Source: Macrostomum lignano (taxonomy: Eukaryota). Taken from it: DNA of 64,000 nt. The stretch covers positions 40,569 through 104,568 of the forward strand of contig NIVC01003283.1 of the NCBI GenBank assembly GCA_002269645.1, written 5' to 3'. Below, piece by piece: positions 1-59,900 of the stretch (its first letter is position 1; every line of letters begins with the position of its first letter). The position numbers and the translations under genes were made by a program. Under the pieces are notes generated by a model. It saw only the letters and a program-made list of their open reading frames with translations, was not told the origin of the DNA and searched no databases.

Positions 1-2270
1 AGTAACTCCTTCTGCAGGTGGTAGACCTCCGGCGGCGCAGCTCGTCAACATTGTGCACAGTCCGCTGGAGAGCGCCTTCTCTCTGGCGCAGCTTCTTGAT
101 CTCCAGTTTCAGCACGCGAATGTCCTCCAAGCGCTGGTTGTAACTGGCACTTCGCCCTTGTTCAGCAGCGACTGCTGGATCTTGATCTTCTCGTACAGCA
201 GGGCCAGCTCGTCGTTGCGACGAACCAGCTGCGTGCCGAGGATGTCCCTCTCGCTGACCAGCTTGTCCAGCTCCTTCTTCTGGCGAAGTCTCTCGGCATC
301 CGCCTCGTTGATCATCTTAGTCAGTTTCTTCTTCTCAACCTCCTGAGCCTCGATGTAGTCGCTGTTCTCCTTGTGCAGCTTTTTCATAGCCTGCAGCTCT
401 TTGCTGAGCTGGTCCTTCTCCTTCTCCACCTTCTGTCGCTCCATGTTCTCCTTGACCAGCTGGCCGTCCTTCATGGCCGTCTCCTCCTTCAGCTGGTCAA
501 TCTGGTGCGACATGATCTTGTGCTTCCGCTTCAGTTCCGTGATCTCATCCTGGGCCTCGATCAGGTTCTTGCTGTACAGGTTTCGGTCGCTGCGGACGGC
601 CTCGTACAGATTCTGCTGCTGCCGGAGGCGAGTCTCGGCCTCGGCAATCTTCTTCTTGTAGTCGAAGATCTGCATTTCGCGCACCTTCACATCCTCCATA
701 TGCTGTAGCACCTTCTGCGTCAGGTCTGAGGCCTCGTTGATGTACCGATCTCGCTCCTTTTCCAACTGGTAGATGATCTTCGCTGTTTCTGCGCCTCATC
801 TTTGTAGTTCTCAATCTCCTGCTCCAGAGTTTTCTTCGAGGCCTCGTGCAGCTTCACCATGCCGCGCTGCTTCTCCGTGGCGTTGGCCGCCTTGATGAGA
901 TTTTTGTTGAGAATGTCGCGCTCTCTGGTCAGCTCGTCGACAACCTTCTTGTCCTGTTCGTTGGCCTTCTTGATCAGGTCCATCTCTGCACAATGATGAT
1001 GGGACGGTGTTAGCGCGTGATAGAATCTCTTTTTGTAGGAACTGGTCCTCTAAACCAGTTCATGCATTCAAAGCCTGGTCTTACCCTTCTCCATGCCGTG
1101 AATCTCATTCTTGAGCTGTTCTCTCTGGCCTTCCAGGTTGCTTTTGTTGTCCTCGGTGAGGCGCAGCTTTCGTAGCGTCGTCTCGCGAACTCGCACGAGC
1201 TTTTGAATTTCACTCTTCAGCGAATTCACTTCGTCCTCGCGTTGCTGTGTTGTTGGTAAGACAGTGGAAATGTTTATTCCTGCTTTGAATATTTATTTTA
1301 AATATAGAATATCAGGTAATTATTTTAGACCATTAACTCACCTTGAGCTCTAGAGTCTTCGACTGGTTGTCTCCGATGAGCTGCTGCACCCGCTGACGCT
1401 GATCGTTGAGTACCATTGTGTCATCCTTGATCTTGGTCTCCAGGAAGTGCTGGTGCCGCTGGGCCTTCTCCAGCTCGGCTTTGGTCGCTCGGATCTCCTC
1501 CTCTCGGGTTTTGTTCTCCTGGGTCACCCCGGCCAGCCGAGATCGCAGAGTTTGAATCTCGCCCTCTTTAGCCTCGGCTTCCGCTTTCGCCTGTTTGAGA
1601 TCGCGCTCCATTTTCTCCTTCTTGCGCTGCTCGCGGGTGGCCTCGCTGTTCTTGGTTTGGATCTCCTGCTCCAGCTCGGCCACCTTCGTCTGACAGTCGG
1701 TCAGGTCCGTCTCCAGCCGCAGCTTTTGCGACTTGTTCTCTTCAAGCTCATCTCTCAGATGGCTGTTCTGCTGCATGAGTTCGTCGCGCTGCTTCGTAAG
1801 CTCCTCCTTTGCCTCAAGCAGCTCGCTGACGTTCTGATCCTGACCAGAGGTTAAGCCTGCACCCTGCTCCACCAGCTTGCTGAGATTGGCGATTTCCAGT
1901 TTCAAGCTCTGGATAGTGTCGCGAGCTCGGCCTCTTTGTCGTGAGCAGCGTCCACCATCTTCCAGGCTTTCTCGATCTCCTTTTTCAGCGAAGCAATGGT
2001 AGCCTGGTCTTCCTCTGAGAGTTTCAATGCAGAGGTCATCTTGGCCGAGTTGGCCACAATTTCAGCCTTGAGCTCGCGGCACTTCTGCATCAGTCGCTTT
2101 TCGCTTTCGTGGCTCTTTTGCAGGGCGCGCATCAGCTTCTCGTATTCGAGTTTGAACTTGTCCAGGCCTTTGTTGCCCTGCAGCTCCTGCAGCACTTCCT
2201 GGAAGTCTTTCTCAAGCGTGTCGAACGCTGAGTCATCCATCATACCCTTTTCCTTTCGGTCCTCCTTCTC
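1..2270 (-). CDS. CFAP58: Cilia- and flagella-associated protein 58 (CCDC147), partial. Exons 2270-1342, 1244-1085 and 985-<1, with several apparent small frameshifting indels.
   Basis: Translations DDSAFDTLEKDFQEVL, EIEKAWKMVDAAHDKE, KERDRYINEASDLTQK, QQQNLYEAVRSDRNLYSKNLIEAQDEI and RRNDELALLYEKIKIQQS match CFAP58 as I recall it. GT-AG sites are phase-consistent (AAG|gtgagt at 1342/1341, G|gtaag at 1085/1084, tgcag|AG at 986/985). An acceptor at 2271 precedes in-frame EKEDRKEKG-MM, so the true start may lie in an upstream exon. Confidence 0.95.
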
Positions 2271-13370: not shown

Positions 13371-15474
13371 TTAGCCATCCTCCTTTGGCGGAGTGAACCA
13401 GCCTTTCTTCTCGTGAATGTGCACCAGCGCCCGGAAGCTGTGCTGCGCCCTGGCCAGGCTGTAGGCATTCTTACTAGCTGAGAACTGCACCCGGGCCTTG
13501 CCTTTGACCAGAGTGGCCGAGATCTGCAGCACCAGAGACTCCAGGCTGTAGGCGGACGACCAGCCCTGGGTAGCGGTTGGTGGGTGGCATAAGTAATAAG
13601 TAGCACGTGACCTTGAGATTGCGGCTTGTAGCCTACACTGGAGAGGGGAACTGATGACCCTGAGGGACCAGAGAGGGGAACTGATGACCCTGAGGGACCA
13701 GAGAGGGGAACTGATGACCCTGAGGGACCAGAGAGGGGAACTGATGACCCTGAGGGACCAGAGAGGGGAATGATGACCCACAGCAAGCATCAGAGGGGGG
13801 AACTGATGACCCACAGCAAGCATCAGAGGGGGGAACTGATGACCCACAGCAAGCATTAGAGGGGGGAACTGATGACCCACAGCAAGCATCAGAGGGGGGA
13901 CTGATGACCCACAGCAACCATCAGAGGGGGAACTGATGACCCACAGCAAGCATTACCCAGCCCTAACCTGCTTGGTGAGCAGCTCCATGCAGATAGCTCC
14001 GCCCTGCAGCACATAGCCGTTGGTAAGCACGGGATTAACAACACGCACAAAAGGCGGCTCGAATGGGAATGCGTCTTTAAAATAGAATCCCAGAGTAATC
14101 CGGCCAGCGTCTGAGTCGCCATTCCGGCTGAGCTGCTCTAAGTCGCGCTGCAGCGGACTGTCCGGGTCAACGCGCAACAGGTGCACATGCCATTCGTACA
14201 GGCTGTCGTTAACCAGCTCAACGGAGAACATGCCAGCCTTCAAACTGGACGATCTGGGATTTGGGTTTAATAGCGAGTGTGCAATGATTACAACACTGTT
14301 TATATATTCGCAAATTGATTCACTACTTACTACTAACGAGGTTTGGCAGTAGAGTTTTTCAGCGATAAAATCTAGAAACAGTGAAACTATTCTTAGAAAT
14401 CCGGAACACGGCTCTGACTTTCTAATCGTGAGGCATGTACACTCTTCGAGCACACAAGAGCCCGTGCACAGGATTCGAACCAGGGGCATTTTGGTGCGAA
14501 AGGGTCAGGCGCGTCAGCCTTGTGAGTAGCAAGGAGAGGCCTGAGTTCAAACGCTCGCAAGCGTCACAGTGAGAGACTCACCTGTACAGCTCCTTTAACT
14601 CCTTCATAAGCCGATCTGTGGCCTGCACGGAGCCAAAAGCCGGGGCCGCCTGTTTAGCGTAGGCCTCCCGTTGCGCAGTTTTCAATCTGCGCAGCGTTTC
14701 AATATGGGCGCGCGAATCGATGCCGGCAAACTCGCACGACAGGTCGGAGGTAGCGGCAGCGTCGGCCGAGGCGAAGGAGGCGTTGGCGGCGCCGGATGTT
14801 GAAGAGCAGCCGCTCGGCTCCGAGCCGGCGATGCCGGAAGCAGCGTCCGACATGTGCAGATCGTCCTCGTAGTCCTCGAAGCCGGTGTCCTCCTCGTCCG
14901 ACATGCTGCTGCCAGCGGCGCCGTCATCGTCCTGCAGGTTTAATAATAAACCAAATAGTGCTACTTATAGTAGGCTAATGCGGAATAGTCGGAGAAAATG
15001 AACCAGAGTGGCCAGTTGGCATCAATAAAAACTTGAAAATTTGATATTTTTCATGTTGCGTGTCGCGTTGAGGGTCAGATATAAGTTAAGCTAAGCTGGC
15101 CATGGTTAGTAGGCAGTTAAACAGCCTAGATTCACACATCAAGGAAGTCACAGTGTCGGCGAGTGATCAGTTGCAAAACTTCTATAGAAAATGAAAACCA
15201 ATACAATAAGGCTTACAGCATCATGATATTCTTCATCATCATCTGCAGCGGCGGCGGCAGCTGCCCCACTTGCTTGGCGGCGTGTGGCGGCAGACGAGAG
15301 ACGCAGCTGGGCAACCTCGGGCGGCACAGTCAGGCCGAAGGAGGCGCACAGGCGGTCCAACAGACTGCAGGTCTGGCAAACCAGATTGCAATTTCGCGGG
15401 TAGGCCTCCTGCAGTTCGGCCAGCCCTGACGTCACTTTCTGATTGTCGGAGTCTGAGAACCACAGCGCTGGCGT
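13371..15474 (-). CDS. UBE2Q: Ubiquitin-conjugating enzyme E2 Q family, 5'-partial. Exons 15474-15217, 14931-14582, 14253-13968, 13565-13371.
   Basis: [64 protein letters not shown]|GWSSAYSLE and the C-terminus [14 protein letters not shown] are typical of UBE2Q1/2. All four junctions are GT-AG and phase-consistent. The N-terminal exon was not found. Confidence 0.95.
13636..13950 (+). repeat. Compound 30-bp (x4) and about 33-bp (x6) minisatellite in the last UBE2Q intron
   Basis: Units gaggggaactgatgaccctgagggaccaga and gaggggggaactgatgacccacagcaagcatca. Confidence 0.95.
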
Positions 15475-23550: not shown

Positions 23551-26500
23551 GTCGCCAAAGGCCTGGCCTTCCTCAACCGCGACTGCCGCCTGCTCCACGG
23601 TCGCGTCGTGCAGCCTCCGTGTTTGTCAATAGCGCCGGCGAATGGAAACTGTGGGCCTTTCAGCACACCGCGCCGCTGGGAATCCGTCTGGCGCGGTGGC
23701 TTCGGCTGGTGTTGAACTGCCTGACATTTACCTGCCTGGCGATGCGGACAGGCTGGTTAAGGCTGCCGACCGGGAGACCATCGACTCCTGGGGACTGGGC
23801 TGCTTCGTCTGGGAGGTTGGTTGCTTCATCTGTATTGGTGTATGCAAACTTGACTGGGGGTTCTGCCTGTTTCTCCTGTTTTGGGGATTCTTGTTGTAAC
23901 AACAGATTCTTGTTATTTTGATGGGTGAGATTTTGAATGGATTCTTGTTATTGTGATGGGTGAGATTTTGAATGGATTCTTGTTACTGTGTAATGGGTGA
24001 GATTTTGAATGGATTCTTGTTATTGTGATGGGTGAGATTTTGAATGGATTCTTGTTACTGTGTAATGGGTGAGATTTTGAATGGATTCTTGTTATTGTGT
24101 AATGGGTGAGATTTTGAATGGATTCTTGTTATTGTGTAATGGGTGAGATTTTGAATGGATTCTTGTTATTGTGATGGGTGAGATTTTGAATAGATTTCAT
24201 CGTAATTTTCATACCGTTTGTGGGAGAAAAGTGGGTTTTAGCCTAGCGGTCAGAGCGTCGGACTCACGACTTGAACGTCGGGGGTTCGATTCCCGATCCC
24301 ACATGAACAATTTGTGTCCTTGAGCAAGACACTTAACTCTGCACTGCTTCAGTTCACTCAGCATTAGCTGGGGTAATTGGGGTCCAGTCCTTGGACTGAA
24401 CAGCCGTACGCAGCCCTCAGATGCGCTCCATTGGGGCAGGTGTAATCAACTATTTTTTATTATTATTATTACTATTGTAGGAAAATGAAATGATTTCTCC
24501 AATTACTCAACCTGTCAACAGGTGTTCAACAGGCCGCTGACCTCGCGCCAGGATCTGCGCCAGTGGCCACGTGCCGCAGGCGCTGCAGCCGGCTTACGCG
24601 AGCTCATCCGCGACCGGGCGGCCCAGCGCTGCCCTGCGGCAGACTTTCTGCAGCGCTGCTCCAAGCCCGGCGGGTTTTCGATAATCCTTACACCAGGGCG
24701 CTGCTGCAGCTGGAGCAGCTGCACGTGCTGGCTGCGGAGGAGAAATCTCAGTTTCTTGGCCAGCTGGCGGAGCAGGTGAGATGCCCAGATTCTCTGGCTG
24801 ACCCTGCTTTGCTGTTTTTATCGACTCTAGATTAACAGTATCACCTACCCAGGTCCTAGCATGCACCCCTACCATTCCAGATCTGCCCCTACCATCCCAG
24901 ATCCGCCCTATCATTTCAGATCTGCCCTATCATTCCAGATCTGCCCTACCATCCTAGATCCGCCCCTATCATTTCAGATCCGCCCCTACCATTCCAGATC
25001 TTCCCCTACCATCCCAGATCTGCACCTACCATCCCAGATCCACCCCTACCATCCCAGATCCCCCCTTATTCCAGATCCGCCCCTATCATTCTTGATCCGC
25101 CCCTACCATTCCAGATCTTCCTCTACCATTCCAGATCTGCACCTACCATCCCAGATCCGCCCCTATCATCCCAGATCCGCCCCTACCATCCCAGATCCGC
25201 CCCTATCATCCCAGATCCGCCCTATCATTCCAGATCCGCCCCTACCATTCCAGATCTGCACCTACCATCCCAGATCCGCCCCTACCATCCCAGATTTGCC
25301 CCTATCATCCCAGATCCGCCCCTATCATTCCAGATCTGCCCCTACCATCCCAGATGCGCCCCTACCATCCCAGATCCGCCCTACCATCCCAGATATGCCC
25401 CTACCATCCCAGATTCGCCCCTACCATCTCAGATCCGCCCTACCATCCCAGATGCGCCCTACCATCCCAGATCCGCCCCTACCAATCTCAGATCCGCCCC
25501 TACCATCCCAGATGCGCCCCTACCATCTCAGATCCGCCCCTATCATCCCAGATCCGCCCCTACCATCCCAGATCCGCCCCTACCATCTCAGATCCGCTCC
25601 TATCATCCCAGATCCGCCCCTACCAATCTCAGATCCGCCCCTACCATCCCAGATCCGCCCTATCATCCCAGATCCGCCCCTACCATCCCAGATGCGCCCC
25701 TACCATCCCAGATCCGCCCCTACTAAATAAGGCAAGCTCACTCCCAATCGCAGCTGTCCAACTTCCAGACGACGTGGCCAAGCACAAGGTGCTGCCCCAG
25801 CTAGTCAATATTCTTCAATACGGCGGCGGCGGCTCGGAAGTTCTGCTGCCTCTGCTGCGCCTATCCCGCCTGTGCGACAAATCGGAGTTCGAGGGCCGCA
25901 TCGTGCCCTGCCTGATTCGCCTGTTCTCCCTGCCCGAACGGGTCGCCCGAGTCCGCCTGCTTGAGCAGTTGCCGTCCTACATTGGCCACCTGCCCGACCG
26001 GGTGGTGAACGAGCAGATTCTGCAGCCGTTCTGCCAGGGATTCCACGACACCAGCCCAGTTGTTCGGGAGCACACTATCAGAGCCGCCGTTCACCTGGCC
26101 GAGAAGCTCAACGCTAAGAATCTCAACGAGGAATTGCCCAAGCATTTGACAAGGCTGCAGGTGAGCTTCTTTTGCAGTTTAGCGGCTCTTTTTTAGCTTT
26201 TCGTGTCATTAGGGAGTGTTCTTGCCATTCAAATTTCTTTCATTTCACCTTTCATTAAAAACCTTTAAATGCGTGTCTTCACCCTTCATCATCAGAGGCC
26301 TTACAAATGCCTGTCTTCACCCTTCATCATCAGAGGCCTTACAAATGCCTGTCTTCACCCTTCATCAGCAAAGGCCTTACAAATGCCTGTCTTCACCCTT
26401 CATCATCAGAGGCCTTACAAATGCCTGTCTTCACCCTTCATCATCAGAGGCCTTACAAATGCCTGTCTTCACCCTTCATCATCAGAGGCCTTACAAATGC

Positions 26501-29500
26501 CTGTCTTCACCCTTCATCATCAGAGGCCTTACAAATGCCTGTCTTCACCCTTCATCATCAGAGGCCTTACAAATGCCTGTCCTCACCCTTCATCATCAGA
26601 GGCCTTACAAATGCCTGTCTTCACCCTTCATCATCAAAGGCCTTACAAATGCCTGTCTTCACCCTTCATCATCAAAGGCCCTCAAATGCCTGTCTTCACC
26701 CTTCATCATCAGAGGCCCTCAAATGCCTGTCTTCACCCTTCATCAGCAAATGCCCTCAAATGTCTGTCTTCACCCTTCATCATCAGAGGCCTTACAAATG
26801 TCTGTCTTCACCCTTCATCAGCAAATGCCCTCAAATGCCTGTCTTCACCCTTCATCATCAGAGGCCTTAGAAATGCCTGACTTCACCCTTCATCATCAGA
26901 GGCCTTACAAATGCCTGTCTTCACCCTTCATCATCAAATGCCCTCAAATGCCTGACTTCACCCTTCATCATCAGAGGCCTTAGAAATGCCTGACTTCACC
27001 CTTCATCATCAGAGGCCTTACAAATGCCTGTCTTCACCCTTCATCATCAGAGGCCTTACAAATGCCTGTCTTCACCCTTCATCATCAGAGGCCTTACAAA
27101 TGCCTGTCTTCACCCTTCATCATCAAAGGCCTTAGAAATGCCTGACTTCACCCTTCATCATCAGAGGCCTTAAAAATGCCTGTCTTCACCCTTCATCATC
27201 AGAGGCCTTACAAATGCCTGTCTTCACCCTTCATCATCAGAGGCCTTACAAATGCCTGTCTTCACCCTTCATCATCAAAGGCCTTAAAAATGCCTGTCTT
27301 CACCCTTCATCATCAGAGGCCTTACAAATGCCTGTCTTCACCCTTCATCATCAGAGGCCTTACAAATGCCTGTCTTCACCCTTCATCATCAGAGGCCTTA
27401 CAAATGCCTGTCTTCACCCTTCATCATCAAAGGCCTTAAAAATGCCTGTCTTCACCCTTCATCATCAGAGGCCTTACAAATGCCTGTCTCACCCTTCATC
27501 ATCAGAGGCCTTACAAATGCCTGTCTTCACCCTTCATCATCAGAGGCCTTACAAATGCCTGTCTTCACCCTTCATCATCAGAGGCCTTACAAATGCCTGT
27601 CTTCACCCTTCATCATCAGAGGCCTTACAAATGCCTGTCTTCACCCTTCATCATCAGAGGCCTTACAAATGCCTGTCTTCACCCTTCATCATCAGAGGCC
27701 CTCAAATGCCTGTCTTCACCCTTCATCAGCAAATGCCCTCAAATGTCTGTCTTCACCCTTCATCATCAGAGGCCTTACAAATGTCTGTCTTCACCCTTCA
27801 TCAGCAAATGCCCTCAAATGCCTGTCTTCACCCTTCATCATCAGAGGCCTTAGAAATGCCTGACTTCACCCTTCATCATCAGAGGCCTTACAAATGCCTG
27901 TCTTCACCCTTCATCATCAAATGCCCTCAAATGCCTGACTTCACCCTTCATCATCAGAGGCCTTAGAAATGCCTGACTTCACCCTTCATCATCAGAGGCC
28001 TTACAAATGCCTGTCTTCACCCTTCATCATCAGAGGCCTTACAAATGCCTGTCTTCACCCTTCATCATCAGAGGCCTTACAAATGCCTGTCTTCACCCTT
28101 CATCATCAAAGGCCTTAGAAATGCCTGACTTCACCCTTCATCATCAGAGGCCTTAAAAATGCCTGTCTTCACCCTTCATCATCAGAGGCCTTACAAATGC
28201 CTGTCTTCACCCTTCATCATCAGAGGCCTTACAAATGCCTGTCTTCACCCTTCATCATCAAAGGGCTTAGAAATGCCTGACTTCACCCTTCATCATCAGA
28301 GGCCTTAAAAATGCCTGTCTTCACCCTTCATCATCAGAGGCCTTACAAATGCCTGTCTTCACCCTTCATCATCAGAGGCCTTACAAATGCCTGTCTTCAC
28401 CCTTCATCATCAAAGGCCTTAAAAATGCCTGTCTTCACCCTTCATCATCAAAGGCCTTAAAAATGCCTGTCTTCACCCTTCATCATCAGAGGCCTTACAA
28501 ATGCCTGTCTTCACCCTTCATCATCAGAGGCCTTACAAATGCCTGTCTTCACCCTTCATCATCAGAGGCCTTACAAATGCCTGTCTTCACCCTTCATCAT
28601 CAAAGGCCTTAAAAATGCCTGTCTTCACCCTTCATCATCAGAGGCCTTACAAATGCCTGTCTCCACCCTTCATCATCAGAGGCCTTACAAATGCCTGTCT
28701 TCACCCTTCATCATCAGAGGCCTTACAAATGCCTGTCTTCACCCTTCATCATCAGAGGCCTTACAAATGCCTGTCTTCACCCTTCATCATCAGAGGCCTT
28801 ACAAATGCCTGTCTTCACCCTTCATCATCAGAGGCCTTACAAATGCCTGTCTTCACCCTTCATCATCAGAGGCCTTACAAATGCCTGTCTTCACCCTTCA
28901 TCATCAAATGCCCTCAAATGCCTGACTTCACCCTTCATCATCAGAGGCCTTAGAAATGCCTGACTTCACCCTTCATCATCAGAGGCCTTACAAATGCCTG
29001 TCTTCACCCTTCATCATCAGAGGCCTTACAAATGCCTGTCTTCACCCTTCATCATCAGAGGCCTTACAAATGCCTGTCTTCACCCTTCATCATCAAAGGC
29101 TTAGAAATGCCTGACTTCACCCTTCATCATCAGAGGCCTTAAAAATGCCTGTCTTCACCCTTCATCATCAGAGGCCTTACAAATGCCTGTCTTCACCCTT
29201 CATCATCAGAGGCCTTACAAATGCCTGTCTTCACCTTTCATCATCAAAGGCCTTAAAATGCCTGTCTTCACCCTTCATCATCAGAGGCCTTACAAATGCC
29301 TGTCTTCACCCTTCATCATCAGAGGCCTTACAAATGCCTGTCTTCACCCTTCATCATCAGAGGCCTTACAAATGCCTGTCTTCACCCTTCATCATCAGAG
29401 GCCTTACAAATGCCTGTCTTCACCCTTCATCATCAAAGGCCTTAAAAATGCCTGTCTTCACCCTTCATCATCAGAGGCCTTACAAATGCCTGTCTCCACC

Positions 29501-31065
29501 CTTCATCATCAGAGGCCTTACAAATGCCTGTCTTCACCCTTCATCATCAAAGGCCTTAAAAATGCCTGTCTTCACCCTTCATCATCAGAGGCCTTACAAA
29601 TGCCTGTCTTCACCCTTCATCATCAGAGGCCTTACAAATGCCTGTCTTCACCTTCATCATCAGAGGCCTTACAAATGCCTGTCTTCACCCTTCATCATCA
29701 GAGGCCTTACAAATGCCTGTCTTCACCCTTCATCATCAAAGGCCTTACAAATGCCTGTCTTCACCCTTCATCATCAAAGGCCTTAAAAATGCCTGTCTTC
29801 ACCCTTCATCATCAAAGGCCTTAAAAATGTCTGTCTTCACCCTTCATCATCAGAGGCCTTACAAATGCCTGTCTTCACCCTTCATCATCAAAGGCCTTAC
29901 AAATGCCTGTCTTCACCCTTCATCATCAGAGGCCTTACAAATGCCTGTCTCCCCTGCAAATCAGGTCAAAGACGAGCAGGGCGGCGTGCGCGCCAACGCC
30001 ACCGTGTGCCTGGGCAAGCTGGCTGGCCACATGGCCCCGGCAACGAGGCAGGGCCCCCTGCTGGCCCAGTTCCTCAAATGCCTGCGCGACCCGTTCCCGC
30101 CGGCGAGACAGGCCGCCCTGCTAGCCTGCGCGTCTACCCTGTCATTCTACACACTGCGGGACACCGCCTGCCGCCTGCTGCCGGCCCTCTGCCCGCTGAC
30201 ACTGGACCCGAGCAAAGAGGTTCGCGAGCACGCGTTCCAAGCTATTAACGCCTGTCTGCAACGCCTGCGCAAAGCGTCGGACAGTCCAGAGGAGGCAGCG
30301 GATCTCGAGAGTCAAGTGGCCGCCACTAGAGGCGCGGATTCCACTAGCAAGTCTTGGGCCAACTGGGCCGTGTCCGCTCTGTCAGCCAAGTTCTACAAGA
30401 CCGCCCCGTCTGCGTCTGCTGCCGCCCCCGCTGCCGCTGTACCATCCGCTTCGGCACCTACTCCGGCATCTGCTACTGCCGAGCCTACTAACAGCAGTAG
30501 TATCAGCAAGCCATTGCCGCCTGTCGCTAATACAGCTTCCGCTGCCGCTGCTGCCAATGCGTCGGTAGTTGCGCCAGCCACCACCGACTGGAACGACGCC
30601 TGGAGCGACGCTGACGATGACGGTGATTGGGGCAGCATCGAGGAGGCTGGATCGTCGGCGATGGAGAAGCAATCGGCATCAGGGTTGGCTCCGAGCTCTT
30701 CTTCCTCCGCTGCTGCCAGCGCCTGGGACACCAACTGGGGCGACGAGGAGGACGACACCCAGAAGGAGCCGATCCAGTCGGCGGTGGAGCCGCCGCCAAT
30801 TCGTGCGGCATTGTCGTCGGCTGCAAAATCCGGCGGCGGTGGACTCAAGCTTACTGGCGCTAAAAAGTTGGCGCCGAAATTGGCGCCTAGCGCCGGTAGC
30901 AATCTGGACGCCATCCTATCTGAAGAGATGGCCAGGCAACAGCTGGCACCGCAAAAGCAGCAGCAGCAGCAGCAACAGCCGATCCGAAATCCACAGAAGG
31001 AACAGAAGCACAGAAGGCAGCAGAAGAAACCAAGTGACGATGAGGATGATTGGGGAGCCTGGTAA
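23551..31065 (+). CDS. SCYL1: SCY1-like pseudokinase 1 (NTKL), 5'-partial. Exons 23551-23815, 24522-24775, 25754-26160, 29965-31065, with small apparent deletions in the first three.
   Basis: VAKGLAFLNRDCRLLH, VFVNSAGEWKL, DSWGLGCFVWE|VFN, KHKVLPQL, GFHDTSPVVREHT, RLQ|VKDEQGGVRANATVCLGKL, RDPFPPAR, DPSKEVREHAF and an acidic tail ending DDEDDWGAW match SCYL1 as recalled. Confidence 0.93.
23915..24192 (+). repeat. 35-37-bp minisatellite, 8 copies, in SCYL1 intron
   Basis: Unit gggtgagattttgaatggattcttgttattgtgat. Confidence 0.95.
24231..24476 (+). mobile_element. tRNA-derived SINE with a Deu/Nin-like central domain and (TTA)n tail
   Basis: A box tagcctagcgg (24239-24249), B box ggttcgattcc (24283-24293), acceptor-stem pairing gtgggtt/atcccac and a CAC anticodon loop. 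These are followed by gtgtccttgagcaagacacttaactctgcactgcttcagttcactcagc and a ttattattattatt tail. Confidence 0.85.
24860..25722 (+). repeat. About 20-bp C-rich minisatellite in SCYL1 intron
   Basis: Unit cccagatccgcccctaccat with variants. Confidence 0.95.
26275..29950 (+). repeat. 38-bp satellite-like array (about 3.7 kb, about 95 copies) filling a SCYL1 intron
   Basis: Unit cttcacccttcatcatcagaggccttacaaatgcctgt. The array ends about 15 nt before the acceptor at 29964. Confidence 0.98.
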
Positions 31066-35180: not shown

Positions 35181-38631
<3,451 letters not shown>

Positions 38632-44004: not shown

Positions 44005-44010
44005 TATAAA
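44005..44010 (+). promoter_or_regulatory. Candidate TATA box of the Glu/Lys/His-rich gene
   Basis: cccTATAAAt lies 79 nt upstream of the ATG at 44089. Confidence 0.5.
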
Positions 44011-44088
44011 TTTGCAGACCTCGTCTCCGACTCTGGTGACTTTCGCCGACGACGATTCACATACTCGACGACTCGCTCAATAGCAACC

Positions 44089-45279
44089 ATGAAGTGGCAG
44101 CTCGCTCTCGGATTTTTGCTGTGCGCAGCCCTGGCTGCCCAGGCCGCAAACTCCGGCAATCGTGAACAAGCTCAGGAGCACGAAAAGGAGCACGAGGAGA
44201 AGAGGGAGCTCGAGAAGGAGCGCGAAAAGGCGCACGAGGAGAAGAGGGAGCTCGAGAAGGAGCACGAAAAGGAGCGCGAGGAGCGCGAGGAACTCGAGAA
44301 GGAGCGCGAAAAGCAAGACGACGAGCACGAGGAGGTCGACCAGGAGCGCGAAGAGCTCGAAAAGGAGCGCGAAAAGGCGCACGAGGAGAAGAGGGAGCTC
44401 GAGAAGGAGCGTGAAAAGGAGCACGAGGAGCGCGAGGAGCTCGACAAGGAGCGCGAAAAGCAAGACGAGGAGCGTGAGGAGCTCGACAAGGAGCGCGAAA
44501 AGCAGGACGAGGAGCGCGAAGAACTCGACAAGGAGCGCGAAAAGGAGCACAAGGAGCGCGAAGAGGAGGACGAAGAAGAGCACAAGGACCACAAAGAAAA
44601 GCACAAAGAGCACGAGGAGCACGAGGAGCACGAGGAGCACGAGGAGCACGAGGAGCACGAGAAGCACAAGGTGAAGAAGGAGCTCGAGAAGGCTGAGGAG
44701 GAGCACGAGAAGCACAAGGTGAAGAAGGAGCTCGAGAAGGCTGAGAAGGAGCACGAGAAGCACAAGTTGAAGAAGGTGCTCGAGAAGGCTGAGGAGGAGC
44801 ACGAGAAGCACAAGGTGAAGAAGGAGCTCGAGAAGGCTGAGAAGGAGCACGAGAAGCACAAGTTGAAGAAGGTGCTCGAGAAGGCTGAGGAGGAGCACGA
44901 GAAGCACAAGGTGAAGAAGGAGCTCGAGAAGGCTGAGAAGGAGCACGAGAAGCACAAGTTGAAGAAGGTGCTCGAGAAGGCTGAGGAGGAGCACAAGGAG
45001 CGCAAGGAGCAGAGGGAGCTCGAGAAGGCCGAGAAGGCCGAGAAGGCCGAGAAGGAGCACAAGGAGCGCAAGGAGCAGAGGGAGCTCGAGAAGGCCGAGA
45101 AGGCCGAGAAGGCCGAGAAGGAGCACAAGGAGCGCAAGGAGCAGAGGGAGCTCGAGAAGGCCGAGAAGGAGCACGAGGAGCACAAGGAGGAGGTAGAAAA
45201 GCGCGATGCTATGCTGGAGGCTCTGGCCAACCTGGACAGTTTCAACATGCTGGAGGAGAGGGCCGAGAACCTCAACTAG
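44089..45279 (+). CDS. Intronless secreted Glu/Lys/His/Arg-rich low-complexity helical protein, 396 aa
   Basis: ATG in a good context (gcaaccATGa) and a signal-peptide-like N-terminus MKWQLALGFLLCAALAAQA. G/C-ending codons run throughout. The repeats are imperfect but stay in frame, and the C-terminus is unique (KRDAMLEALANLDSFNMLEERAENLN). A TATA lies upstream and AATAAA is at 45494-45499. Confidence 0.88.
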   Translation: MKWQLALGFLLCAALAAQAANSGNREQAQEHEKEHEEKRELEKEREKAHEEKRELEKEHEKEREEREELEKEREKQDDEHEEVDQEREELEKEREKAHEEKRELEKEREKEHEEREELDKEREKQDEEREELDKEREKQDEEREELDKEREKEHKEREEEDEEEHKDHKEKHKEHEEHEEHEEHEEHEEHEKHKVKKELEKAEEEHEKHKVKKELEKAEKEHEKHKLKKVLEKAEEEHEKHKVKKELEKAEKEHEKHKLKKVLEKAEEEHEKHKVKKELEKAEKEHEKHKLKKVLEKAEEEHKERKEQRELEKAEKAEKAEKEHKERKEQRELEKAEKAEKAEKEHKERKEQRELEKAEKEHEEHKEEVEKRDAMLEALANLDSFNMLEERAENLN

Positions 45280-45957
45280 AATTTCATCAATTTTGGGGTT
45301 GGTTAGATCGGTCTGCAGTGCAGCTGAGACAGAACGAGCGAAATCGCTCCATTGAAGATTGAGGACCGGCCGTACACCGAAAGCCAACTGTTTGTAACTC
45401 TGTTTCCCACATTCATTGCTGAGTGACTTACAAATACTTGAGTGTTCTCGTTTGAAACTACAACAACTTTGATTTCCTGATCAGTTAACACCAAATAAAA
45501 TACTAAAGTGCCCTTAATCTATCGAGTTTGGTTATTCTTCATTTAGAAATTTTGAATTCAGAATTAAAAAGCACAGATTGTAGCTATATAAAATTAAATA
45601 TGATGACTTATAGTAGCACGAAGGTGCCTGAAGTTGAGTCAGAACATTGGGTCATGGGTCAAGACTAAATCAATTTAAATTACATTACAGACACGTACCA
45701 CCGGAAATCACCTGAACTAGACGCTCTACATGCATATGGTCCATAGCATATAGATCTCTGGATTAGAGTAGGAACCCCTACACTTGCAAATCGATAAAAC
45801 TTCTCGTTTGTTGATGAAAACTTTCAGCTCGAACAAGGCGCACACTTAATTGTCCATTGCACTAGGCTTCATTACATTGTGAGCTCGATACATATTGTAG
45901 ACACTAAAAATGGTCTGTGACCAGCATAGTTACAGAGAATACTAAATAATTTTCTTG

Positions 45958-50448: not shown

Positions 50449-51027
50449 ATGCGCCCGCTAATCTCTTGCTGGCTCTTTGTAGCCGCTCTTTGTCTGACCG
50501 CCGTTGCCGTCAGCAACGCGAACTCCAACCTGGATGAAGACGATGACTACATTGGAGTAGCTCCTGAGCATGAGCAGCTCCGATACAACTCAAAAGGCCT
50601 CCGTAGAGATCTTCGTAAGTGGCAGTACAACGGCGGCATGTTCGGAAAACGGCAGTACAACGGCGGCATGTTCGGAAAGCGGCAGTACAACGGCGGCATG
50701 TTCGGAAAGCGGCAGTACAACGGCGGCATGTTCGGAAAACGGCAGTACAACGGCGGCATGTTCGGAAAACGGCAGTACAACAGCGGCATGTTCGGAAAAC
50801 GGCAGTACAACGGCGGCATGTTCGGAAAACGGCAGTACAACGGCGGCATGTTCGGAAAACGGCAGTACAACGGCGGCATGTTCGGAAAACGGCAGTACAA
50901 CGGCGGCATGTTCGGAAAACGGCAGTACAACGGCGGCATGTTCGGAAAACGGCAGTATAACGGCGGCATGTTCGGAAAACGGCAGTACAACGGCGGCATG
51001 TTCGGAAAACGGCAGTACGAAGAGTAA
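50449..51027 (+). CDS. Neuropeptide precursor, 192 aa, with 13 tandem amidated peptides of the QYNGGMF-amide type
   Basis: Signal-peptide-like MRPLISCWLFVAALCLTAVAVS, an acidic spacer, then 13 units of QYN(G/S)GMF-G-KR (30 nt each, 50623-51012). G-KR is the canonical amidation plus convertase cleavage signal. Confidence 0.93.
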   Translation: MRPLISCWLFVAALCLTAVAVSNANSNLDEDDDYIGVAPEHEQLRYNSKGLRRDLRKWQYNGGMFGKRQYNGGMFGKRQYNGGMFGKRQYNGGMFGKRQYNGGMFGKRQYNSGMFGKRQYNGGMFGKRQYNGGMFGKRQYNGGMFGKRQYNGGMFGKRQYNGGMFGKRQYNGGMFGKRQYNGGMFGKRQYEE

Positions 51028-53887: not shown

Positions 53888-54957
53888 CACACAGCTAGAC
53901 TTCATACACTCCCTGACACAAATCACAGCTAGATTTCATACACTCCCTGACACAAATCACAGCTAGATTTCATACACTCCCTGACACAAATCACAGCTGG
54001 AATTCATACACTCCCTGACACAAATCACAGCTAGATTTCATACACTCCCTGACACAAATCACAGCTAGATTTCATACACTCCCTGACACAAATCACAGCT
54101 GGAATTCATACACTCCCTGACACAAATCACAGCTAGATTTCATACACAGGCTGACACAAATCACAGCTAGATTTCATACACTCCCTGACACAAATCACAG
54201 CTAGATTTCATACACTCCGACACAAATCACAGCTAGATTTCATACACTCCCTGACACAAATCACAGCTGGAATTCATACACTCCCTGACACAAATCACAG
54301 CTAGACTTCATACACTCCCTGACACAAATCACAGCTAGATTTCATACACTCCGACACAAATCACAGCTAGATTTCATACACTCCCTGACACAAATCACAG
54401 CTAGATTTCATACACTCCGACACAAATCACAGCTAGATTTCATACACTCCCTGACACAAATCACAGCTGGAATTCATACACTCCCTGACACAAATCACAG
54501 CTAGATTTCATACACAGGCTGACACAAATCACAGCTAGATTTCATACACTCCCTGACACAAATCACAGCTAGATTTCATACACTCCCTGACACAAATCAC
54601 AGCTAGATTTCATACACTCCCTGACACAAATCACAGCTGGAATTCATACACTCCCTGACACAAATCACAGCTAGATTTCATACACTCCCTGACACAAATC
54701 ACAGCTATATTTCATACACTTCCTGACACAAATCACAGCTAGATTTCATACACTCCCTGACACAAATCACAGCTGGAATTCATACACTCCCTGACACAAA
54801 TCACAGCTAGATTTCATACACTTCCTGACACAAATCACAGCTAGATTTCATACACTCCCTGACACAAATCACAGCTATATTTCATACACTTCCTGACACA
54901 AATCACAGCTGGATTTCATACACTCCCTGACACAAATCACAGCTGGAATTCATACAC
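53888..54957 (+). repeat. 34-bp minisatellite, about 31 copies
   Basis: Unit tcacagctagatttcatacactccctgacacaaa. Confidence 0.97.
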
Positions 54958-56904: not shown

Positions 56905-59900
56905 TTATTCCTTTTTCAGCCGCAGCCGCTCGTTGATAATCTTGCACCGCTGGGCGCACTCGTCCGCGCTGCGGGAGCCCACGGCCGCAGCCACCTGATC
57001 CCAGCGCTCCTTCGTACCTTTGGGAAATTGTCTGAGCGCCGCCTCCAGCTTAGACTGCTCAGCCTGACTCCAGGCCCGAGTCCGCTGCTGAGCTTCATCT
57101 ATATCGTCTTCTTCTGCTTTAACGGTTACGCCTCTCTGCTGCTGCTTCTGGCGCTTATTTCGACGCCTTCGCTGCGCCCTGCCGGCGCCGCCATCCGAAT
57201 CGGCGTCGCTGTCAGAGTCCGATTCGCCGCACACCGCTGCCCCATCGGTGTTGACTTCGAAAGCGGCGTTGAGGCTGGCGGCAGCCTGGCGCCGCATCTG
57301 CTGCTCGGCCTCGCGAGCCCGGGCGGCCACGTCCGGCACGGCGCGATGCAGCAGGGCGGCGATTTTCTCCCAGCGGCCGGGCGTGCCGCTGGGGAATCTG
57401 GCAACTGCCTTGACCAGAAGCTGCTGCTCCGCCTCGCTCCAGGGACCCTCGACTAGAGCCGGCGGAGTCGTTGATTCCGCCTGGTCGCCGTTGCTGACGG
57501 CGGCTTTGACTGGCGGAGTCGGCAACGGCTGCTGCTGTTCTGCCAGCAATTGCTGCTGCACCTGGGCCAGTTGCTGCTCCCGGCGCTCGCGTTTCTGCTG
57601 CTTTCTCTGCTCCCGCCTGCGGGCCTCCTCGGCTGCGGCTTCCGCTTCCGCTTTGGCCGCCCGCTTCCGTTGCAGTTCGGCGTCGCGCCAATCGGCCAGG
57701 CTGTCCAGCGCCCAGCGGCAGGCGCCTGGCGCGCCAACAGCGCAGGCGTAGAGGCCGCGACCGATGGCCAACGGCAGGAGGTCCCGCCAGCCTGGGCCCA
57801 CTAGCGGCTCCTGTTCCAGCTCTTCTTCCAGTTGTTTCTGCTTTTTCTTGCTCTTCCGCCGGAATAGATCGTCGAATGCTAGTTTCCTTTCAATGTAGAC
57901 ACCCCACAGGACTAAATAGTGGCCGACTGTGAACGCCAAGCAGAACACCAGCATCACTTCCGCTAAGCTCATCTTGCGCCACTTCCGGTAATAAAACATC
58001 GGGGTGCGCCAGTCGGGCAGCCCATTGTCAAGGATCTCGTCGTACCTGGCCAGGGTAGAGGGCAGATGGGGAGGTTCAGACTCGATTCTCGGTTCTCGTG
58101 ATTGAAAAAAAAACTTTGAATCAGGCCTAGGAGTGATTCTTGGTTCCCGGGCGGTTCTTGATTTTGGTTACCAGCCTTTCTTGAAAATTAGCCAACCCCA
58201 CAACAGAGTGTACATGCCTGACGATGTACACCCTGTGTGAGCGTGTGCATGAGTGCGTGCACCGTTTGCAGGATGGTGTTGCCGAAGGCACTGCGCCAGG
58301 CTGCCCACAACCCAATTGCAAGTATTATTAGTAGGAGTTATTCTGAGAATATCTTATGAAAATTCATTTTCGGAATTGACACCGCCGAGATACTTGCGAG
58401 CTGGGCGGATCCCACCTGAGCGCTCGCAATAAGGTATCATTACTTTAGGCATGAGAAATTTCCAAACGCGTCACAAAATGGGGAATTGAAGTATTCGATA
58501 AAAAAGTACTTTTTCACCTGCTGGGATCAAAGCATAAAATTTGATGGACTTTTAACTTGATTAAAAGCTATTAACCGATTAAAAGGCATGTCATGTGCGT
58601 TACAATCAATATAATCACATAAAAGTTTTTAGCTTGTCTAGACACTTATATAGGACAATCGATAAATAAAAAATGGGGAAACACAAATGCTTGAAAGTAG
58701 ACGATTATAATTGTATGCGTAGCTAATAACTAGATATTAGGAATGGGCTATTGCGAGCGTAAACAATCCAATTAGAATCGCCGATGACACCCATTAAGAA
58801 TCGCCCACGACACAATGAGGAATCGCCCATGACACCATGAGGAATCGCCCATGACACCATGAGGAATCGCCCATGACACAAAGGAATCGCCCATGACACC
58901 ATGAGGAATCACCCATGACACCATGAGAAATCGCCCATGACACCATGAGGAATCACCCATGACACCATGAGAAATCGCCCATGACACCATGAGGAATCGC
59001 CCATGACACCATGACGTATCGCCCATGACACCATGAGGTATCGCCCATGACACCCATGAGGTATCGCCCATGACACAATAAGGAATCGCCCATGACACAA
59101 TAAGGAATCACCCATGACACCATGAGGAATCACCCATGACACCATGAGAAATCGCCCATGACACCATGAGGAATCCGCCCATGACACAATAAGGAATCGC
59201 CCATGACACCATGAGGTATCGCCCATGACACAATAAGGAATCGCCCATGACACCATGAGGTATCGCCCATGACACCCATGAGGTATCGCCCATGACACCC
59301 ATGAGGAATCGCCCATGACACCATGAGAAATCGCCCATGACACCCATGAGGAATCGCCCATGACACCCATGAGGAATCGCCCATGACACCCATTAGGAAT
59401 CGCCCATGACACCCATGAGGAATCGCCCATGACACCCATGAGGAATCGCCCATGACACCATGACGTATCGCCCATGACACCCATTAGGAATCGCCTATGA
59501 CACCATTAGGAATCGCCCATGACACCATTAGGAATCGCCCATGACACCATGAGGAATCGCCCATGACACCATGAGGAATCGCCCATGACACCCATGACAC
59601 CATGAGGAATTGCCCATGACACCCATGACACCATGAGGAATTGCCCATGACACCCATGAGGAATCGCCCATGACACCCATGACACCATGAGGAATTGCCC
59701 ATGACACCCATGACACCATGAGGAATTGCCCATGACACCCATGACACCATGAGGAATTGCCCATGACACCCATGACACCATGAGGAATTGCCCATGACAC
59801 CCATGAGGAATCGCCCATGACACCATAAGACATCGCCCATGACACTATAAGGACTCGATGCCATTAAATCAAACGCACCTCCGCCTCAGAGTTTCATCCT

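What the first reader, a model, noticed from the sequence alone, without database searches (positions are those of the whole stretch)
44089..45279. Secreted Glu/Lys/His polyampholyte with modular repeats and a unique C-terminal peptide after KR
Seen: after the signal peptide and NSGN, the chain uses almost only E, K, H, R, L, A, Q, D and V, with no Pro, Gly, Cys or aromatic residue until the tail. The N-terminal half is acidic, followed by an (HEE)5 run, seven 16-aa HEKHK(V/L)KK(E/V)LEKAE(E/K)E repeats in alternating pairs, and HKERKEQRELEKAEK repeats. There are four KR sites, the last releasing DAMLEALANLDSFNMLEERAENLN. Established: E/K-rich tracts form single alpha-helices or coiled coils, His clusters bind metals, and granins are acidic, dibasic-cleaved granule proteins. 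Inference: a pH- or metal-switchable secretory granule component (rhabdite, mucus, adhesive, eggshell or granin-like). I recognise no homolog.
Basis: partly seen in the sequence, partly recalled or inferred. Interest (0 to 1): 0.7.

Follow-up and report, generated by a model that had tools for sequence, protein, structure and literature searches.

The report
Orphan secreted charged-repeat protein, flatworm
This is a real, annotated, intron-less gene of the flatworm Macrostomum lignano that encodes a secreted, almost purely charged (Glu/Lys/His) helical repeat protein with no detectable relatives; its sequence suggests a pH-switchable gland or granule cargo, but nothing here shows where it is made or what it does.

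Summary
ORF 44089-45279 (+) encodes 396 aa: a signal peptide, a strongly acidic 14-aa-repeat block, an (HEE)5 hinge, seven 16-aa and three 22-aa repeats, four KR sites and a unique 24-aa tail.

The window is Macrostomum lignano contig NIVC01003283.1. The gene has a TATAAA box, no upstream ATG and an AATAAA signal. All its repeat periods are multiples of 3. The RNA-seq-derived GenBank annotation calls a gene at exactly ATG..stop.

A near-identical duplicate contig carries a 365-aa version. It differs only by in-frame repeat number and lacks the (HEE)5 hinge.

No homolog or family was found in Pfam, PDB, 5.8 billion clustered proteins or 1.84 billion representatives; the only hits were spurious low-complexity ones.

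AlphaFold2 predicts two long helices broken at the His hinge. Computed charge is about -50 at pH 8.1 and -9 at pH 5.5. At pH 5.5 the N block is -23 and the C block +21.

Best reading: a lineage-restricted secreted gland or granule cargo whose His-rich block lets it condense at acidic pH. This mechanism is inferred, not shown. The granin-like label is analogy only. Eggshell and adhesive roles are disfavoured by composition. Interest is modest.

The parts
44005..44010 (+). TATAAA box, 79-84 nt upstream of the start codon. No ATG lies between it and 44089.
44089..45279 (+). Uninterrupted coding sequence, 396 codons plus stop. A gene is called at exactly these limits in GCA_002269645.1.
44089..44145 (+). 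Signal peptide, residues 1-19 (MKWQLALGFLLCAALAAQA). Predicted cleavage is AQA|AN by the -3/-1 rule; no SignalP was available.
   Evidence: inspection
44176..44598 (+). Acidic block, residues 30-170. It holds about ten diverged 14-aa units (ELEKEREK + 6) arranged as a 49-aa super-repeat. Net charge is about -36, and three KR sites lie at residues 38, 52 and 101.
44599..44655 (+). His-rich hinge, residues 171-189, including (HEE)5 at 44611-44655. It is the only break in the predicted helix. A 21-aa stretch here (63 nt, including the whole (HEE)5 run) is missing from the duplicate copy.
44656..44991 (+). Seven near-identical 16-aa repeats HEKHK(V/L)KK(E/V)LEKAE(E/K)E, residues 190-301. Each has an HxxH pair and a small V/L-L-A patch. 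Charge is +2 at pH 8.1 and +17 at pH 5.5. The duplicate copy has five units.
44992..45204 (+). Three HKERKEQRELEKAEK(AEK)n repeats and the stretch ending in EEVEKR, residues 302-372. The fourth KR is at 45199-45204. The duplicate copy has four units.
45205..45276 (+). Unique C-terminal 24 residues, DAMLEALANLDSFNMLEERAENLN. Net charge is -5 and 33% are hydrophobic. This is the only place downstream of residue 24 with M, F, S or N. It has no amidation Gly and no KDEL.
45494..45499 (+). AATAAA polyadenylation signal, 215 nt after the stop codon.

Best explanation
This is a real, transcribed, intron-less, TATA-driven gene restricted to Macrostomum lignano or its close relatives. It encodes a secreted protein that is almost wholly charged and predicted to be helical.

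After the signal peptide is removed, the mature chain of about 377 aa is a block polyampholyte with four parts:
- an older, diverged, strongly acidic N block;
- a His-rich hinge;
- a recently expanded Lys/His/Glu C block;
- a short unique acidic-hydrophobic tail.

The most likely mechanism is inferred, not shown. The protein is cargo or matrix of a gland cell's secretory granules. In the acidic lumen the 19 His of the C block protonate, the chain approaches net neutrality, and the positive C block pairs with the negative N block of the same or other chains, with Ca2+/Zn2+ helping. This allows dense packing. On release into seawater at about pH 8 the chain becomes a polyanion of about -50 that dissolves and swells. 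There it may act as a hydrated polyelectrolyte and cation binder.

The repeat arrays evolve fast by slippage or unequal exchange.

Confidence is split: about 0.8 that it is a genuine secreted-protein gene, and about 0.3 for the pH-switch packaging mechanism.
For: **Gene reality**
- TATA box, no upstream ATG, A at -3, and a poly(A) signal.
- Only frame +1 of the plus strand is open.
- 16 of 16 repeat periods are divisible by 3, against 32 of 74 elsewhere in the window.
- Codon choice is strongly G/C-ending: GAG:GAA 125:20, AAG:AAA 80:2, CAC:CAT 35:0.
- A gene is called at ATG..stop in both duplicated contigs of GCA_002269645.1. That annotation was built only from RNA-seq and transcript assemblies plus TransDecoder (PMC5730564).
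- The duplicate copy keeps the frame through three separate length changes: -63, -96 and +66 nt.

**Secretion**
- Signal-peptide-like N-terminus, no second hydrophobic segment, no KDEL.

**Charge switch**
- pI 5.2.
- At pH 8.1: whole chain -50, N block -36, C block 0.
- At pH 5.5: whole chain -9, N block -23, C block +21.
- 15 HxxH pairs.

**Helical prediction**
- AF2 gives helices 7-170 and 184-395 with mean pLDDT 80.

**Orphan status**
- No family or homolog was found.
Against: - There are no data on tissue, granule localisation, processing or metal binding.
- The charge switch is a calculation with model pKa values.
- The AF2 model is single-sequence with pTM 0.30. AF2 tends to call any E/K-rich tract helical.
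- Opposite-charge i,i+3/i+4 pairs are not enriched over shuffles: 90 against 85 +/- 6, and 93 against 86 +/- 7.
- The (HEE)5 hinge is absent from the duplicate copy.
- The two copies are about 99% identical in their flanks, so they give no test of purifying selection.
- Differences among the repeats show only a mild third-position excess.
- The GenBank models are 16 and 60 aa shorter than the ORFs, so the exact transcript structure is unverified.
- Conservation in other Macrostomum species could not be checked.
Confidence: 0.4

Rival explanations
1. Young orphan gene with little or no function. A GA-rich coding microsatellite expanded behind a chance or borrowed signal peptide. It is transcribed and perhaps translated, but its repeat content drifts neutrally.
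For: - No homolog was found anywhere.
- The C-block repeats are 98-100% identical at DNA level and differ in number between the duplicated contigs.
- The (HEE)5 run is dispensable.
- 35% of the window is tandem repeat, so the genome expands repeats readily.
- Third-position excess among repeat differences is weak.
Against: - The N block repeats are older (82-90% identical) yet stay within one nine-residue alphabet with no stops.
- Both copies keep the same termini and frame.
- Codon bias is strong.
- The promoter and poly(A) architecture is canonical.
Confidence: 0.2
2. Reproductive or other gland secretion that acts outside the body, for example a prostate seminal-fluid protein or a cement or pharyngeal gland product. 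It would work as an extracellular polyelectrolyte rather than as a granule-packing aid. This overlaps with the best explanation.
For: - In M. lignano, 76 prostate-limited transcripts are known. Of the 65 with an identified ORF, 38 have predicted signal peptides. 31 of the 76 have no BLAST hit (PMC5977470).
- The target is secreted, orphan and fast-evolving in its repeats.
Against: Nothing links this locus to any tissue. The published screens give no sequences in the text held here.
Confidence: 0.15
3. Prohormone. The KR sites are cut by a prohormone convertase, and the C-terminal 24-mer (and perhaps ELEKEREKAHEE) is a signalling peptide. The charged repeats would be only a spacer.
For: - There are four KR sites, and the last lies directly before the only non-repetitive peptide.
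- A classical KR-processed, amidated multi-copy neuropeptide precursor lies 5 kb downstream (50449-51027), so the organism uses such processing.
Against: - A spacer of about 350 aa for a single non-amidated peptide is atypical.
- Three of the four KR sites are simply part of the EEKRELEKE repeat.
- The tail has no match in any library.
- Adjacency to another precursor is not evidence in a eukaryote.
Confidence: 0.1
4. Not a gene. It would be a purine-rich minisatellite whose T-poverty leaves frames open by chance.
For: T is only 6% of the segment. A minus-strand frame has no stop at all and gives a 436-aa Leu-rich ORF.
Against: - All repeat periods are multiples of 3.
- The unique, normally composed 5' and 3' ends are in frame and encode a signal peptide and a tail.
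- TATA and AATAAA lie in the right orientation.
- A transcript-based gene call exists on the + strand in two contigs.
Confidence: 0.05
5. The long-sought negatively charged releasing factor of the duo-gland adhesive organ, displacing the Lys/Arg-rich cohesive protein Mlig-ap1.
For: The product is secreted and carries net -50 at seawater pH. The published model calls for an unknown negatively charged secreted substance (PMC6410801; PMC9229212).
Against: The same authors predict a small molecule. They report PAS-positive polysaccharide and a low protein density in releasing vesicles. No tail-plate expression is known for this gene.
Confidence: 0.02

Closest known systems
Granins (chromogranin A/B, secretogranins)
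   Same: Signal peptide, acidic Glu-rich chain, several dibasic sites, and predicted aggregation at acidic pH with divalent cations. This is the role proposed here.
   Different: No sequence relation: there is no Pfam Granin hit. The mature chain has no Cys and so no disulfide loop. It has a far lower-complexity alphabet and a Lys/His block that granins lack. Granule localisation is unknown.
Histidine-rich calcium-binding protein (HRC) of sarcoplasmic reticulum
   Same: Signal peptide followed by tandem repeats that combine His with long acidic runs. HRC is a high-capacity cation binder of a secretory-pathway lumen. This comparison rests on my own knowledge.
   Different: No Pfam hit to the HRC repeat family. 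The repeat units are different (HEKHK.../ELEKEREK). It is rich in Lys, and there are no orthology data.
ER/K single alpha-helix (SAH) domains (myosin-6/10, caldesmon, MAP4K4-type)
   Same: E/K/R-rich tract predicted as a long uninterrupted helix with no hydrophobic seam. The N block has one Leu per 14 residues.
   Different: SAH domains are cytosolic and close to charge-balanced, with enriched i,i+4 E-K pairs. Here the protein is secreted, the N block carries net -36, and opposite-charge i,i+3/4 pairs are not enriched over shuffles.
pH-triggered His-rich or oppositely charged coacervating secretions (squid beak HBPs, sandcastle-worm cement polyelectrolytes, mussel preCol His domains)
   Same: His protonation or paired polyanion and polycation blocks control condensation in granules and behaviour after release into seawater. 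This is an analogy of mechanism, drawn from my own knowledge.
   Different: Those proteins are Gly/Tyr/Ser(P)/DOPA-rich and become structural materials. This chain has no Gly, Tyr or Cys and almost no Ser, so it cannot be cured the same way.

Membership tests
Granin (Pfam PF01271) | Sequence match to the granin family profile or its conserved terminal motifs | tested here: not met
   Pfam scans at E<=0.01 and E<=10 return only a sub-threshold DUF3450 hit.
Granin (Pfam PF01271) | N-terminal disulfide-bonded loop (CgA/CgB) | tested here: not met
   The only Cys is residue 12, inside the signal peptide.
Granin (Pfam PF01271) | Acidic, Glu-rich secretory protein with multiple dibasic sites | tested here: met
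   pI 5.2, 37% Glu, 4 KR, 7 KK and 3 RK. Cleavage itself was not tested.
Granin (Pfam PF01271) | Storage in dense-core granules of the regulated pathway | not testable with these tools
   Needs in situ hybridisation or immuno-EM.
Histidine-rich Ca-binding protein | Match to the HRC repeat profile | tested here: not met
   No Pfam hit. No PDB or protein-library relative.
ER/K single alpha-helix | Long predicted helix without a hydrophobic core positions pattern | tested here: met
   AF2 helices 7-170 and 184-395, with pLDDT above 90 over residues 40-160. Hydrophobic fraction is 0.06 in the N block. The single-sequence model is a caveat.
ER/K single alpha-helix | Enrichment of opposite-charge pairs at i,i+3/i+4 and near charge balance | tested here: not met
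   90 pairs against a shuffle value of 85 +/- 6 (N block); 93 against 86 +/- 7 (C block). The N block carries net -36.
Neuropeptide prohormone | Signal peptide plus dibasic-flanked peptide(s), usually repeated or amidated, and conserved across species | tested here: inconclusive
   A signal peptide and KR before a unique tail are present. There is no Gly-KR amidation site, only a single copy, and the tail has no match. The neighbour at 50449-51027 shows what a typical precursor looks like.
Flatworm adhesive proteins (Mlig-ap1/ap2 type) | Very large proteins with Lys/Arg-rich repeats and known carbohydrate- or protein-binding domains | tested here: not met
   396 aa, net acidic, no Pfam domain. 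The family's features are as described in PMC9229212 and PMC6410801.

The most novel reading that the evidence does not exclude
The protein is a self-coacervating block polyampholyte that arose de novo from GA-rich coding repeats. It would serve as a flatworm analogue of granins. His protonation would make its C block cationic in acidic granules, so that it condenses with its own acidic N block and packs a gland's secretion. It would then dissolve explosively at seawater pH. A far less likely variant is that it is the anionic de-adhesion factor of the duo-gland organ.
Probability: 0.12. Interest if true: 0.6.

Novelty: new member of a known kind. Interest (0 to 1): 0.3.

Why it matters
If the charge-switch reading is right, this is a very simple, genetically encoded pH-responsive polyelectrolyte. 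It has nine residue types, no cysteine and no glycosylation sequon. That would interest people who study granule packaging in invertebrates, where no granin homologs are evident, and people who work on biomimetic coacervates. It also shows how fast secreted repeat genes change between the duplicated chromosomes of M. lignano. As things stand it is one of many orphan secreted low-complexity genes in a repeat-rich flatworm genome. It is already present as an uncharacterised gene model, so its value is as a candidate, not as a discovery.

Tried and rejected
- **Exact-sequence look-ups.** The 396-aa product, the 365-aa duplicate and seven guessed 380-aa forms (one 16-aa unit removed) were not in the collections. 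The neighbour's annotated protein is also missing from the protein collection. Absence there therefore says nothing about M. lignano's own annotation. I could not obtain the BOX15_Mlig locus tag, and so could not look the gene up in expression tables.
- **Homology searches.** The whole protein against 5.8 billion clusters gave nothing at E<=0.001. The unique N- and C-termini, concatenated, gave nothing at E<=1. The whole protein against 1.84 billion representatives gave 23 hits, best E 4.7e-24. The six inspected, including the five best, are unrelated coiled-coil or low-complexity repeat proteins, such as a butyrophilin/SPRY protein with KERESLAKERE repeats and bacterial ERD-repeat proteins. 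None has a matching signal peptide or tail.
- **Family and structure libraries.** Pfam gave nothing at two thresholds. PDB sequences gave nothing for the whole protein or the tail.
- **Literature string searches.** Searches for peptide fragments of the target and of the neighbouring neuropeptide found no paper.
- **Published M. lignano screens.** The prostate and seminal-fluid screen and the adhesion papers hold no sequences that would let me place this gene.
- **Amphipathic-helix sorting signal in the tail.** Rejected: the hydrophobic moment at 100 degrees is 0.34, below the shuffle mean of 0.58.
- **Selection test between the two genomic copies.** Uninformative: there are no point differences in the unique coding parts, and the flanks are 98.9-99.8% identical.
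- **Structure search with the AF2 model.** Not run. A long helix with pTM 0.30 would give meaningless matches.

Full report
**What the window is.** An exon at 56905-57996 (-) is 99% identical to NCBI 'hypothetical protein BOX15_Mlig009023g1 [Macrostomum lignano]'. An exact look-up of the neighbouring ORF 50449-51027 returned two contigs of assembly GCA_002269645.1 (Mlig_3_7). Locus L002 (NIVC01003283.1) is base-for-base identical to window 40449-61027. The window is therefore genomic DNA of the free-living marine flatworm M. lignano. Tandem repeats cover 35% of it, in line with the published description of this genome (PMC5730564).

**Checking the observation.**
- The N-terminus MKWQLALGFLLCAALAAQA|ANSGN looks like a signal peptide.
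- Residues 25-372 use only E, K, H, R, L, A, Q, D and V.
- The acidic N-terminal half is built from about ten diverged 14-aa units arranged as a 49-aa super-repeat.
- (HEE)5 lies at residues 175-189.
- Seven 16-aa HEKHK units follow in the order X,Y,Z,Y,Z,Y,Z.
- Three HKERKEQRELEKAEK units follow those.
- KR occurs at residues 38, 52, 101 and 371.
- The unique tail is DAMLEALANLDSFNMLEERAENLN.

**Is it more than a chance ORF?** ORF length alone is not evidence here. The segment has only 74 T in 1191 nt, and one minus-strand frame has no stop at all. Four independent points support coding.
- Frames +2 and +3 carry 9 and 10 stops, while frame +1 carries none.
- All 16 Tandem Repeats Finder rows inside the ORF have periods divisible by three, against 32 of 74 outside it.
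- The normally composed, non-repetitive ends are in frame. They encode a signal peptide and a distinct tail.
- The gene has a canonical layout: TATAAA at 44005-44010, no ATG between it and the start codon, A at -3, and AATAAA 215 nt after the stop.

Codon choice is strongly G/C-ending: GAG:GAA 125:20, AAG:AAA 80:2 and CAC:CAT 35:0. That is the same direction as, but stronger than, most neighbouring exons; the neuropeptide gene is an exception (AAG:AAA 3:12). Differences among the older 14-aa repeats show a mild third-position excess (86 against 53 and 61). All replacements stay inside the same charged alphabet.

**Transcript evidence.** The annotated assembly calls a + strand gene at exactly ATG..stop of this ORF (L002 3641-4831), and at the equivalent place on a second contig (L001 1701-2798). 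The 483-aa model called next to it in L001 matches the length of the named GenBank protein P0001. These called genes are therefore the GenBank annotation. That annotation was derived solely from RNA-seq and de novo transcripts (StringTie/TACO/TBONE, with ORFs by TransDecoder) and then filtered for submission (PMC5730564). I take this as indirect evidence that the locus is transcribed.

The annotated products are 380 and 305 aa. They are 16 and 60 aa shorter than the uninterrupted ORFs. 48 nt is exactly one 16-aa unit, and GT..AG pairs 48 nt apart exist within the repeats. I infer spliced-alignment artefacts or repeat-number differences in the underlying transcripts. I could not see the exon structure.

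**The duplicate copy.** M. lignano DV1 carries large duplicated blocks. L001 (NIVC01001785.1) is such a copy. The 1.7 kb upstream is 99.8% identical and the 1.6 kb downstream is 98.9% identical. Its ORF is 365 aa.

The unique coding parts and the whole N block are identical to the window's copy. The only differences are three in-frame length changes:
- a 63-nt deletion that removes a 21-aa His-rich stretch containing the whole (HEE)5 run;
- two fewer 16-aa units;
- one more 22-aa unit.

So the C-block arrays are young (98-100% identical units) and unstable. The (HEE)5 run is not essential to the architecture. The copies are too similar to test for purifying selection.

**Relatives.** None was found.
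- Pfam gave only a sub-threshold DUF3450 hit.
- PDB sequences gave nothing.
- The 5.8-billion-cluster search found nothing at E<=0.001 with the whole protein. It found nothing at E<=1 with the concatenated unique termini.
- The exhaustive HMMER search of 1.84 billion representatives gave 23 hits. The ones I inspected (the five best and one more) are unrelated repeat or coiled-coil proteins that match only through E/K/R/L periodicity.

One caveat applies. The protein collection lacks even the neighbour's annotated product. These searches therefore do not cover M. lignano's own gene set well, and probably not other Macrostomum transcriptomes either. The correct claim is that no homolog exists outside the genus in these libraries. 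Conservation within the genus is untested. Literature string searches with peptide fragments found no paper.

**Physical character.** AlphaFold2 (single sequence, mean pLDDT 80, pTM 0.30) predicts two long helices, 7-170 and 184-395. The only break is at the His hinge. The relative position of the two helices is not reliable.

The N block has one Leu per 14 residues and no second hydrophobic position, so a canonical coiled coil is unlikely. The 16-aa units carry a small V/L-L-A patch, but their 16-residue period does not keep a seam on one face. The tract is also not a textbook ER/K single helix. Opposite-charge pairs at i,i+3/i+4 are not enriched over shuffles, and the N block is far from charge balance.

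Computed charges, with pI 5.2:

| Region | pH 8.1 | pH 5.5 |
|---|---|---|
| Whole mature chain | -50 | -9 |
| N block (25-170) | -36 | -23 |
| C block (190-372) | about 0 | +21 |

There are 15 HxxH pairs. The mature chain has no Cys, no N-x-S/T sequon, no Tyr, no Gly after residue 23, no KDEL ending and no second hydrophobic segment. The tail is acidic and one-third hydrophobic. It is not a strongly amphipathic alpha-helix: its hydrophobic moment is below the shuffle mean.

**Most likely mechanism.**
- *Shown:* a gene with promoter and poly(A) signals that encodes a signal peptide followed by a block polyampholyte.
- *Inferred from the annotation:* it is transcribed.
- *Inferred from the sequence:* it enters the secretory pathway and is released or stored, not retained.
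- *Inferred from charge calculations and general knowledge of acidic secretory granules:* at granule pH the His-rich C block becomes cationic and the chain becomes nearly neutral. Intra- or intermolecular pairing of the two blocks, helped by Ca2+/Zn2+, would then allow dense packing. At seawater pH the chain becomes a soluble polyanion.

This resembles what granins and HRC-type proteins do, and what pH-triggered marine coacervates do. It is an analogy of mechanism. Membership of those families was tested and is not met.

The composition argues against a quinone-tanned eggshell precursor or a cured adhesive, which need Tyr/DOPA, Gly or Cys. It also argues against the large domain-rich Mlig-ap1/ap2 type.

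A role as the anionic releasing factor of the adhesive organ is conceivable from charge alone. However, the authors of that model predict a small molecule, and they report PAS-positive, protein-poor releasing vesicles.

**Rivals.** Five rival readings are scored in their own section:
- a functionless young orphan gene;
- an extracellular gland or seminal-fluid product, which overlaps with the best explanation;
- a prohormone releasing the C-terminal peptide;
- a non-coding repeat;
- the de-adhesion factor.

The main uncertainty is biological context, and the tools here could not supply it.

**Verdict.** Localisation, processing and metal binding remain untested.

It is a new member of a known kind, the lineage-specific secreted charged repeat proteins. 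Interest is modest at 0.3. It would rise to about 0.6 if the self-condensing granule-packing role were demonstrated.

Noticed in passing
window 50449-51027 (+): Intron-less ORF of 192 aa that looks like a classical neuropeptide precursor. It has a signal peptide, an acidic spacer, and 13 tandem copies of QYNGGMFGKR (one is QYNSGMFGKR). These would yield pyroGlu-YNGGMF-amide after KR cleavage and amidation. It is annotated as a gene on both duplicated contigs. No Pfam hit, and no paper contains the peptide string.
   Followed up: partly
L001 (NIVC01001785.1:32921-53499) versus window 40449-61027: A second, 98-99% identical copy of the whole neighbourhood exists in the assembly, as expected from the duplicated chromosomes of line DV1. 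The copies differ mainly in tandem-repeat lengths. The stretch between the target gene and the neuropeptide gene is about 1.9 kb shorter in L001.
   Followed up: partly
window 44077-45387 (-): A 436-aa Leu-rich ORF on the opposite strand of the target, plus a 367-aa Ser/Cys/Phe-rich one. These are mirror artefacts of the T-poor coding strand, not genes.
   Followed up: yes
L002 3641-4831 and L001 1701-2798: The annotated products (380 and 305 aa) are shorter than the uninterrupted ORFs (396 and 365 aa) by 48 and 180 nt. These are probably spurious introns placed inside perfect repeats by spliced alignment, so the deposited protein sequences are likely truncated internally.
   Followed up: partly
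window 26267-29950 and throughout: Tandem repeats cover 35% of the window. One example is a 38-bp unit repeated 97 times just upstream of a HEAT-repeat protein exon (29638-31065). Others are (CTGT)n at 37332-38409 and a 34-bp unit repeated 32 times at 53890-54957. Many of them create long spurious ORFs in several frames.
   Followed up: partly
window 109-1905 (-), 13953-14489 (-), 29638-31065 (+), 56905-57999 (-): Exons of ordinary conserved genes flank the target. They include a coiled-coil protein, a ubiquitin-conjugating-enzyme-like fragment (weak UQ_con hit), a HEAT-repeat protein with a low-complexity acidic C-terminus, and a DnaJ/SANT (Myb-like) protein identical to BOX15_Mlig009023. None has an evident functional link to the target.
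   Followed up: partly
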